From: Octopus bimaculoides
Lineage: Eukaryota
DNA length: 33,279 nt
Assembly: GCF_001194135.2 (NCBI RefSeq)
Contig: NC_068985.1
Coordinates: 46,903,593 to 46,936,871, forward strand
Direction of reading: 5' to 3'
In this document: positions 8,581 to 8,720 of the stretch, one piece after another
Layout of the letters: each line of letters opens with the position of its first letter
Numbering within the stretch: the stretch's first letter is position 1
Position numbers and translations under genes: made by a program
The notes under the pieces: generated by a model
The model's input: the letters and a program-made list of their open reading frames with translations, nothing else
Databases searched by the model: none
Told to the model about the DNA's origin: nothing

Positions 8581-8720
8581 GAATTTACTTGAACTTTCTA
8601 GAAGTTTCANNNNNNNNNNACTTTAGAGAAGTTTCTAAAAGTTTCAAGAATTTCTAGAACGTTCTGAAAGCAGAGATGGTGGTATAAACACAGATATCGT
8701 AAGCTGAACTGTTCAGTTTA
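8581..8720 (+). promoter_or_regulatory. Heat-shock element array with TATA box and initiator
   Basis: Perfect GAActTTCtaGAAgtTTC at 8591-8608, with further nGAAn units at 8628-8650 and a perfect TTCtaGAAcgTTC at 8652-8664. TATAAA at 8683-8688 and TCAGTT (Inr) at 8713-8718 put the TATA at about -32. A 10-N gap interrupts the array. Confidence 0.55.

What the first reader, a model, noticed from the sequence alone, without database searches (positions are those of the whole stretch)
8581..8720. Orphan heat-shock promoter: HSE array, TATA box and initiator with no gene behind it
Seen in sequence: roughly 12-14 alternating nGAAn pentamers. They include a perfect 4-unit element (8591-8608, extended by an imperfect pair from 8581) and a perfect 3-unit element (8652-8664). 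TATAAA follows at 8683 and TCAGTT at 8713, so the TATA sits at about -32. Established: this is the architecture of HSF1-driven hsp70 and small-HSP promoters. Downstream ATGs (8773, about 8840) open only short peptides and no strong splice donor follows. Inference: it could drive a heat-inducible non-coding RNA or non-coding first exon, be an HSE-bearing LTR promoter (as in the heat-activated plant retrotransposon ONSEN), or be a leftover of a lost HSP gene.
Basis: partly seen in the sequence, partly recalled or inferred. Interest (0 to 1): 0.75.

Follow-up and report, generated by a model that had tools for sequence, protein, structure and literature searches.

The report
Gene-less mirror-image heat-shock promoter
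A real, statistically solid heat-shock promoter (a cluster of heat-shock-factor binding sites, a TATA box and an initiator) sits at the centre of an old mirror-image duplication with no protein-coding gene within 24 kb, so it probably drives a non-coding heat-induced RNA or is left over from a lost pair of heat-shock genes.

Summary
Positions 8581-8668 carry 13 perfect GAA/TTC triplets, or 16 pentamer units if three one-mismatch units are counted. They form at least three HSEs. TATAAA follows at 8683 and TCAGTT at 8713, so the TATA sits at -32. The cluster exceeds all 1000 dinucleotide shuffles, and the TATA-N22-28-TCAGTY pair occurs once in the window on both strands.

The 10-N gap cannot reduce the array to one HSE. 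Each flank holds a complete HSE, and any overlap model leaves at least 10 triplets.

No gene follows. Pfam, tblastn with seven chaperone/ubiquitin queries and two searches of 5.8 billion proteins found no coding exon downstream. ORFs after the start site are 38 aa or shorter.

New finding: the array lies on the axis of a diverged inverted duplication of about 640 bp. The left arm (8304-8571, minus strand) mirrors the right arm (8687-8941). It includes a second TCAGTT at 8530-8525 and an A-rich leader, but it has no TATA.

My reading is a bona fide HSF-type promoter module derived from a divergent pair of heat-shock transcription units, now driving non-coding RNA. Rival readings (a distant first exon, a TE-borne promoter, an enhancer, a dead relic) cannot be excluded without RNA data or the rest of the genome. 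This is a known kind of element and the interest is moderate.

The parts
8304..8571 (-). Left arm of the inverted duplication: a mirror copy of the core promoter and leader, read on the minus strand. It has an initiator but no TATA box.
   Evidence: With the array excluded, the local alignment of 8672-8950 against the reverse complement of 8300-8578 scores 81. Dinucleotide shuffles give 44.6 +/- 6.7, and 0 of 500 reach 81. The same-orientation control scores 39. Collinear blastn blocks are 8500-8479 ~ 8747-8768 (86%) and 8450-8427 ~ 8796-8818 (83%). The first 230 nt of the minus-strand RNA are 42% A.
8525..8530 (-). Mirror initiator TCAGTT on the minus strand, with predicted +1 at 8528. GAATCT stands where a TATA would be (8560-8555).
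   Evidence: One search lists TCAGTT on the minus strand at 8530. The motif density is 3.6e-4 per base per strand, so a hit within +/-6 nt of the mirror position has a chance of about 0.005. The sequence was read.
8581..8609 (.). HSE-A: six pentamer units (AGAAT TTACT TGAAC TTTCT AGAAG TTTCA). Four contiguous perfect units lie at 8591-8608.
   Evidence: (the only perfect 4-unit element in the window).
8610..8619 (.). Assembly gap of 10 N, lying on or beside the symmetry axis of the palindrome (axis about 8621.5-8623.5 with the gap as written).
   Evidence: The axis was computed from the block coordinates.
8622..8651 (.). HSE-B: six units (TTTAG AGAAG TTTCT AAAAG TTTCA AGAAT), four of them perfect.
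   Evidence: TRF scores 8627-8659 as a 10-bp repeat, AGAAGTTTCT x3.4.
8651..8668 (.). HSE-C: a perfect TTCnnGAAnnTTC (8652-8664) plus a terminal GAA that is 1 nt out of register. This is the proximal HSE, ending at -47.
8683..8688 (+). TATA box (TATAAA), starting at -32.
   Evidence: It is the only TATAAA-N22-28-TCAGTY in the window on either strand.
8713..8718 (+). Initiator TCAGTT, with predicted +1 at 8715.
8715..8941 (+). Right arm: a predicted A-rich (35% A, 14% C) non-coding leader. The block best conserved with the left arm is 8742-8840.
   Evidence: 76% identity over 89 columns; ORFs of 19 aa or less in this stretch; no RNA structure signal, z = 0.

Best explanation
This is a genuine HSF-type heat-shock promoter module built as a diverged palindrome.

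Shown from sequence: a central array of at least three heat-shock elements (16 AGAAn-type units, 8581-8668) is flanked by two divergent core initiation regions 187 bp apart. The rightward one is complete, with TATAAA at -32 and TCAGTT (+1 about 8715). The leftward one keeps the initiator (+1 about 8528, minus strand) but has no TATA. Each is followed by about 200 nt of related, A-rich, ORF-free leader.

Inferred mechanism: on heat or proteotoxic stress, HSF trimers bind the array cooperatively and recruit or release RNA polymerase II. This should happen strongly rightward and weakly leftward, giving short-ORF-only, presumably non-coding, heat-inducible RNAs.

Inferred origin: an inverted duplication of one heat-shock transcription unit (promoter plus leader). 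That layout is known from divergent hsp gene pairs. Here the coding bodies are absent from the assembled window.
For: HSE cluster. It lies far beyond chance: 7 in-phase dimers per 100 bp against a maximum of 4 in 1000 shuffles, and 0 of 5000 shuffles of the array's own composition reach it. Three of the window's four perfect trimers are here.

Unit logo. Information per position is 0.88, 1.33, 1.66, 2.00 and 0.22 bits, i.e. AGAAn. Mismatches are concentrated at positions 1 and 5, outside the GAA core (3/48 at positions 2-4 against 13/32 at positions 1 and 5; Fisher p = 3e-4). A plain slippage minisatellite would not be expected to show that pattern.

Core promoter. The TATA/Inr pair is unique in the window and correctly spaced. 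The proximal HSE ends 15 nt before the TATA. From my memory this matches the spacing in Drosophila hsp70.

Mirror duplication. Score 81 against 44.6 +/- 6.7 in shuffles, 0 of 500 reaching it, same-orientation control 39. There are collinear blocks of 83-86% identity and a mirror TCAGTT.

No coding capacity. Pfam on all ORFs of 30 aa or more on both strands found only a Tc1/mariner fragment 24 kb away. tblastn with HSP70/27/40/90/60/10 and ubiquitin found nothing below E = 0.3. There were zero hits in 5.8 billion proteins for ORFs around the locus and for filtered (non-repetitive) + strand ORFs of 30 aa or more from 8.65 to 33.3 kb. Transcript ORFs are 38 aa or shorter.

Precedents. HSF-1-bound HSEs drive ncRNAs, pseudogenes and repeats in C. 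elegans (PMC6765114). HSF1 has non-coding targets in mammals and Drosophila has hsr-omega (PMC9032817). The bidirectional hsp-16.2/41 promoter spans 394 bp with two HSEs (PMC3587839).
Against: No expression, HSF-binding or cross-species data could be consulted, so heat-inducibility is pure inference.

The mirror similarity is old (about 65-76% identity). Under a stricter gap scoring it is only z = 3.3 and below the best of 200 shuffles.

The two halves of the array lie on different contigs joined by a 10-N gap, so their adjacency rests on scaffolding plus symmetry.

Exons shorter than 30 aa, lineage-specific genes and anything hidden in the 12 gaps (5184 N) would have been missed.

No poly(A) signal or terminator-like feature bounds the rightward RNA before the contig ends in a microsatellite at 9274.
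Confidence: 0.45

Rival explanations
1. It is the working promoter and non-coding first exon of a protein-coding, possibly chaperone, gene. The coding exons would lie more than 24 kb downstream, beyond the window, in unassembled sequence, or on a mis-scaffolded contig.
For: The leader is A-rich and ORF-free, like a 5' UTR. The assembly is fragmentary, with 12 gaps and contigs of 243-880 bp around the locus. Two gaps are flanked by exact duplicates, which shows imperfect scaffolding.
Against: No strong splice donor lies in 8715-9274; the best is 5.1 bits, about the 95th percentile of all GTs. The 222-N gap after 9274 sits inside a (TG)n/(TA)n tract next to a SINE-like repeat, which does not suggest a hidden gene. 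No exon was detected in 24.5 kb. From general knowledge, heat-shock genes are usually compact and intron-poor.
Confidence: 0.2
2. It is a promoter carried by a transposable element: a foldback or MITE-like element whose long inverted arms are its terminal repeats, a solo LTR, or a Helitron-type HSE carrier.
For: The roughly 640-bp unit is palindromic, as foldback elements and MITEs are. The window is saturated with repeats. Helitrons carry most HSEs in C. elegans, with up to more than 100 per copy (PMC6927752). ONSEN LTRs carry HSEs (from memory).
Against: There is no second copy of 8400-9274 in 33 kb. No terminal inverted repeat with a target-site duplication was found at the ends of the arms. 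No gag/pol/RepHel or other TE domain lies nearby. ORFs from the locus match no protein in 5.8 billion. The arms differ by about 25-35%, so if this is a TE it is ancient. The metagenome pattern scan gave 0 hits, but that test has low power.
Confidence: 0.15
3. It is an HSF-bound distal enhancer. The two initiators would be the divergent start sites of short unstable enhancer RNAs, and the real target gene would lie elsewhere.
For: Central transcription-factor sites flanked by two initiation regions 187 bp apart fit the divergent architecture described for both promoters and enhancers in heat shock (PMC5557961 abstract; PMC9032817 on HSF1-bound enhancers producing eRNAs). No stable-RNA features such as donors or a poly(A) signal occur on the + side.
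Against: A consensus TATA plus a consensus Inr is a strong directional core promoter. About 200 nt of leader are retained in both arms, which points to a transcribed unit that was duplicated rather than to a mere binding platform.
Confidence: 0.1
4. It is a dead relic or a chance product: a palindromic 10-bp minisatellite (AGAAGTTTCT)n at the centre of an inverted repeat that only mimics an HSE array and has no transcriptional activity.
For: TRF sees a 10-bp tandem repeat at 8627-8659. The unit AGAAnnTTCT is its own reverse complement, so it fits the centre of any palindrome. The left core promoter has already lost its TATA.
Against: Variation among units is concentrated at positions 1 and 5, outside the GAA core (p = 3e-4). 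The correctly spaced TATA/Inr pair is unique in the window. The cluster exceeds every shuffle, even shuffles of its own composition.
Confidence: 0.08

Closest known systems
hsp70-type heat-shock promoter (Drosophila hsp70 as the archetype)
   Same: Several HSEs of alternating nGAAn units lie within about 140 bp upstream of the start site. The proximal HSE ends about 15 nt before a TATA box at about -30. There is an Inr at +1 and an A-rich leader. The comparison with Drosophila spacing is from memory.
   Different: No chaperone coding sequence follows. All ORFs are 38 aa or shorter and no HSP similarity exists anywhere in the window.
Bidirectional promoters of divergent heat-shock gene pairs (C. 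elegans hsp-16.2/hsp-16.41: a 394-bp common promoter with two HSEs, PMC3587839)
   Same: Central HSEs are shared by two divergent start sites. The two sides are mirror images of each other, as in inverted-duplicate hsp pairs.
   Different: The inter-start distance here is 187 bp. Only one side keeps a TATA. Neither side has a coding body, and the mirror similarity stops about 200-230 nt after each start.
HSF-driven non-coding transcription units (Drosophila hsr-omega, human SATIII, NEAT1; C. elegans HSF-1-dependent ncRNAs and the pseudogene dct-10; PMC9032817, PMC6765114)
   Same: An HSE-bearing Pol II promoter is followed by sequence without coding capacity.
   Different: No tandem repeat body like hsr-omega or SATIII lies in 8715-9274. 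There is no Rfam family and no structure signal. Transcription has not been shown.
TE-borne HSE arrays (Caenorhabditis Helitrons, PMC6927752; plant ONSEN LTR, from memory)
   Same: A dense HSE array lies in otherwise non-genic, repeat-rich DNA.
   Different: The locus is single-copy in the window. It has no TE termini, no target-site duplication and no TE protein.

Membership tests
HSF-dependent heat-shock promoter | At least one HSE of three or more contiguous alternating nGAAn units | tested here: met
   A perfect 4-unit element lies at 8591-8608 and a perfect 3-unit element at 8652-8664, within 16 units in all.
HSF-dependent heat-shock promoter | HSEs lie proximal to a Pol II core promoter (TATA about -30, Inr at +1) | tested here: met
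   The array spans -134 to -47. TATAAA starts at -32 and TCAGTT is at +1. This pair is unique in the window.
HSF-dependent heat-shock promoter | HSF occupancy and heat-induced transcription | not testable with these tools
   No expression or ChIP data are available for this genome.
HSF-dependent heat-shock promoter | Drives a chaperone or stress gene | tested here: not met
   No HSP or other coding exon lies on the + strand to the end of the window.
Divergent hsp gene-pair (bidirectional) promoter | Two opposed core promoters share central HSEs | tested here: inconclusive
   Initiators occur on both strands (8713 on +, 8530 on -), but only the + side has a TATA.
Divergent hsp gene-pair (bidirectional) promoter | The two flanks are related in mirror image (inverted duplication) | tested here: met
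   Score 81 against shuffles of 44.6 +/- 6.7, with 0 of 500 reaching it. Collinear blocks show 83-86% identity. The signal is weaker under stricter scoring.
Divergent hsp gene-pair (bidirectional) promoter | Paralogous hsp coding sequences on both sides | tested here: not met
   Searches found no coding similarity on either side.
TE-borne HSE promoter (LTR / Helitron / foldback-MITE) | Multiple dispersed copies | tested here: inconclusive
   There is no other copy in the 33-kb window, and 0 hits in metagenome contigs. The genome itself could not be searched.
TE-borne HSE promoter (LTR / Helitron / foldback-MITE) | Defined termini with a target-site duplication | tested here: not met
   A brute-force TIR+TSD scan of the arm ends found only chance-level candidates, all lying inside the region of similarity.
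TE-borne HSE promoter (LTR / Helitron / foldback-MITE) | Associated TE proteins (gag/pol, Rep-helicase, transposase) | tested here: not met
   The only TE domain in the window is a DDE_3 fragment at 32795-33079, 24 kb away.
Heat-inducible lncRNA locus (hsr-omega / SATIII type) | An HSE promoter followed by an RNA without coding capacity | tested here: met
   ORFs are 38 aa or shorter and have no homologues.
Heat-inducible lncRNA locus (hsr-omega / SATIII type) | A tandem-repeat body of the transcript | tested here: not met
   TRF finds no tandem repeat in 8715-9274. A (TG)n/(TA)n microsatellite starts at about 9262.

The most novel reading that the evidence does not exclude
This would be a single-copy, bidirectional, heat-inducible long non-coding RNA locus in a non-model invertebrate, a functional analogue of Drosophila hsr-omega. 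It would have arisen by inverted duplication of a heat-shock promoter plus leader, and the HSE array would have been kept under selection after the coding parts were lost.
Probability: 0.2. Interest if true: 0.6.

Novelty: new member of a known kind. Interest (0 to 1): 0.35.

Why it matters
If the locus is heat-inducible, it would show that the non-coding arm of the heat-shock response also exists in this lineage. So far that arm is documented mainly in flies, nematodes and mammals. The locus would also be a clean case of a promoter outliving its gene. On the practical side, 8560-8720 would be a compact native heat-inducible promoter of about 160 bp, a candidate for transgenic tools in this organism. 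If it proves to be one copy of a TE family, it would be another example of transposons spreading HSF binding sites, as Helitrons do in Caenorhabditis.

Tried and rejected
Chaperone search.

Domain search. Pfam was run on all non-repetitive stop-to-stop ORFs of 30 aa or more across the whole window on both strands. Only a DDE_3 transposase fragment at 32.8 kb was found.

Protein database. ORFs at 7.9-9.2 kb on both strands gave 0 hits. Filtered (non-repetitive) + strand ORFs of 30 aa or more from 8.65 to 33.3 kb also gave 0 hits.

Organism identification. The mariner fragment's best hits were only 54-55% identical and unnamed. The genome looks cephalopod-like to me, from my memory of its SINE and its (TA)n/(CA)n load, but I could not verify this. 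A full-text search for SINE strings found nothing.

Exact-product look-ups of three window ORFs: none is on record.

RNA checks. Rfam at gathering threshold and by E-value, plus a tRNA scan, found nothing credible. Folding the predicted leader gave z = 0.00.

TE boundaries. The TIR+TSD scan found nothing convincing. The repeat at 7750-8001, with a copy at 12051-12261 on the minus strand, has a different symmetry axis and is an unrelated dispersed repeat.

Related loci. A metagenome pattern scan for Inr plus the conserved leader gave 0 hits.

Other sites. The isolated HSE trimer at 16164 has no partners, TATA or Inr, and I regard it as chance.

Full report
CONTEXT. The window is a fragmentary draft assembly. 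It has 12 N-gaps totalling 5184 N and 35% G+C, and it is full of (TA)n/(CA)n microsatellites and SINE-like repeats. The only recognisable protein domain on either strand is a Tc1/mariner DDE_3 fragment at 32795-33079 on the minus strand. Its best database relatives are only 54-55% identical and unnamed, so the organism could not be identified. From memory the repeats look cephalopod-like, but that is unverified.

GAA/TTC triplets stand at 8581, 8591, 8596, 8601 and 8606, then the gap, then 8628, 8633, 8643, 8648, 8652, 8657, 8662 and 8666. With three one-mismatch units this gives 16 alternating pentamers. They form three sub-elements: HSE-A at 8581-8609 (with a perfect 4-unit run at 8591-8608), HSE-B at 8622-8651, and HSE-C at 8651-8668 (with a perfect trimer at 8652-8664). 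One-nucleotide register slips occur at 8651/8652 and 8665/8666. TATAAA is at 8683-8688 and TCAGTT at 8713-8718. With +1 at 8715 the TATA starts at -32 and the array spans -134 to -47.

STATISTICS. Three of the window's four perfect HSE trimers lie here, against 0.30 trimers per window in 500 dinucleotide shuffles. There are 7 in-phase inverted dimers within 100 bp, against a maximum of 4 in 1000 shuffles. When only the array's own bases are shuffled, 0 of 5000 reach 7. TATAAA-N22-28-TCAGTY occurs once on both strands of the window, at this place.

The unit logo is AGAAn, with 0.88, 1.33, 1.66, 2.00 and 0.22 bits at positions 1 to 5. Departures from consensus are concentrated at positions 1 and 5, outside the GAA core. 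The counts are 3/48 at positions 2-4 against 13/32 at positions 1 and 5 (Fisher p = 3e-4). That is the pattern expected if HSF binding has been preserved. A minisatellite homogenised by slippage would not be expected to show it. The test does assume that the consensus represents the ancestral state.

THE GAP. The window's other 10-N gap (9740-9749) is flanked by an exact 51-nt duplicate. A 104-N gap (14566-14669) is flanked by an exact 53-nt duplicate. Gaps in this assembly can therefore hide overlapping contig ends. At 8610-8619 the best suffix/prefix overlap is only 14/17 or 20/27, which reflects the 10-bp periodicity of the array rather than a true overlap. Merging by 7, 17 or 27 nt still leaves 10-13 triplets and 3-5 perfect trimers. 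Physical adjacency of the two contigs remains unproven.

NOTHING CODING FOLLOWS. Seven checks point the same way.
- ATG ORFs in 8715-9274 are 19, 11, 4, 38, 12 and 14 aa long. The first ATG is at 8767, not 8773.
- The best 5' splice-site score in that stretch is 5.1 bits, about the 95th percentile of all GTs in the window. There is no AATAAA or ATTAAA.
- The contig ends at 9274 in (TG)n. The 222-N gap continues as (TA)n(TG)n next to a SINE-like repeat, so a gene hidden there is unlikely.
- Pfam on every non-repetitive ORF of 30 aa or more found no domain on the + strand from 8.65 to 33.3 kb. Elsewhere it found only the mariner fragment.
- tblastn with seven chaperone/ubiquitin queries gave nothing below E = 0.3.
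- Two searches of 5.8 billion proteins gave zero hits. One used the ORFs around the locus on both strands. The other used the filtered (non-repetitive) + strand ORFs downstream.
- Rfam, the tRNA scan and RNA folding gave no signal.
Limits: exons shorter than 30 aa, orphan genes and sequence lost in gaps would escape these tests.

NEW: A MIRROR-IMAGE DUPLICATION. A repeat scan showed inverted matches straddling the array, at 8468-8505/8742-8779 and 8436-8450/8796-8810. With the palindromic array excluded, 8672-8950 aligned to the reverse complement of 8300-8578 scores 81. Dinucleotide shuffles give 44.6 +/- 6.7, with 0 of 500 reaching 81, and the same-orientation control scores 39. Two other scoring schemes agree, with 0 and 1 of 500 shuffles reaching the observed score.

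Under a stricter scheme on longer flanks, the core block 8747-8840 / 8406-8500 is 76% identical over 89 columns. It reaches only z = 3.3 there, below the best of 200 shuffles. The duplication is therefore real but old.

Blastn finds collinear blocks at 8747-8768 ~ 8500-8479 (86%) and 8796-8818 ~ 8450-8427 (83%). A second TCAGTT lies on the minus strand at 8530-8525. That is within a few nucleotides of the mirror position of the + strand initiator, with a chance of about 0.005 given the motif's density. All these pairs share an axis at 8621.5-8623.5, at the edge of the 10-N gap. A break there is plausible, because palindrome centres often break short-read assemblies (general knowledge).

The left side has GAATCT where the TATA should be, so its core promoter is incomplete. 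Its predicted RNA is A-rich (42% A in the first 230 nt) and has an ATTAAA/AATAAA-type signal at 8407. Its ORFs are 73 aa or shorter and have no homologues. Mirror similarity fades about 200-230 nt after each start site. Beyond that the flanks are unrelated.

INTERPRETATION. The sequence meets every sequence-level criterion of an HSF-dependent heat-shock promoter. Its layout is central HSEs with two divergent initiation regions 187 bp apart and mirror-image leaders. That is the layout of divergent heat-shock gene pairs such as C. elegans hsp-16.2/41, which share a 394-bp common promoter with two HSEs (PMC3587839). Here the layout comes without coding bodies.

I therefore read it as a heat-shock transcription unit that was duplicated in inverted orientation and now carries only non-coding leaders. 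Its rightward promoter is intact and probably still heat-inducible. HSF-driven non-coding RNAs, pseudogenes and repeats are well documented (PMC6765114, PMC9032817), so this is a new member of a known kind.

RIVALS. Five alternatives remain.
- A distant or unassembled coding exon. Weak donors and the normal compactness of heat-shock genes argue against it, but the draft assembly keeps it open.
- A TE-borne promoter. The palindromic shape and the Helitron precedent (PMC6927752) favour it. The single copy in the window, the absence of termini or a target-site duplication and the absence of TE proteins argue against it. Genome-wide copy number could not be tested.
- An HSF-bound enhancer with divergent eRNAs (PMC5557961, PMC9032817). 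The strong TATA/Inr pair and the duplicated leaders make this less likely.
- A transcriptionally dead relic.
- A chance palindromic minisatellite. The logo asymmetry and the unique TATA/Inr pair make this unlikely.

WHAT I COULD NOT DO. No eukaryotic genome or transcriptome of this organism was reachable. Exact-product look-ups failed and a metagenome pattern scan found nothing. Copy number, synteny and expression therefore remain open, and they are what would decide among the readings.

Noticed in passing
window 9689-9739 and 9750-9800 (flanking the 10-N gap 9740-9749): The 51 nt on either side of this gap are identical. The two contig ends overlap, and the gap with one copy is an assembly artefact inside a SINE-like repeat.
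   Followed up: yes
window 14513-14565 and 14670-14722 (flanking the 104-N gap 14566-14669): Exact 53-nt duplicates flank this gap. It is probably another pair of overlapping contig ends, i.e. a spurious gap.
   Followed up: partly
window 32795-33079 (-): A Tc1/mariner transposase fragment (Pfam DDE_3, E = 1.5e-9), truncated and 93-95 aa long. Its closest database relatives are only 54-55% identical.
   Followed up: yes
window 2821-3286: A self-complementary stretch of about 470 bp (64% over 497 columns), centred near 3055. Each half has a translated 'YFID.GR' motif. It is probably two copies of a SINE-like repeat in inverted orientation, and a related 63-nt piece lies at 24238-24300.
   Followed up: partly
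window 7750-8001 and 12051-12261: Two copies of a dispersed repeat in opposite orientation (67% identity over 258 columns) bracket the promoter locus at a distance. Their axis (about 10005) differs from that of the promoter palindrome, so they appear unrelated to it.
   Followed up: partly
window 11198-11344 and 13306-13462; 21732-22014 and 22962-23232; 31126-31223: Further repeat pairs: an inverted pair (77%), a direct pair (82% over 285 nt) and a 100-nt near-perfect palindrome (90%). None was classified.
   Followed up: no
window 16164-16176: An isolated perfect HSE trimer (TTCctGAAccTTC) with no neighbouring units, TATA or initiator. It is most likely chance.
   Followed up: yes
window 17139-17250 and 17929-18040; 22459-22749: Long (CTG/CTA)n trinucleotide tracts lie on both sides of a 542-N gap. 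A G-rich/C-rich tract translates as poly-Gly or poly-Pro. These are low-complexity DNA, not genes.
   Followed up: no
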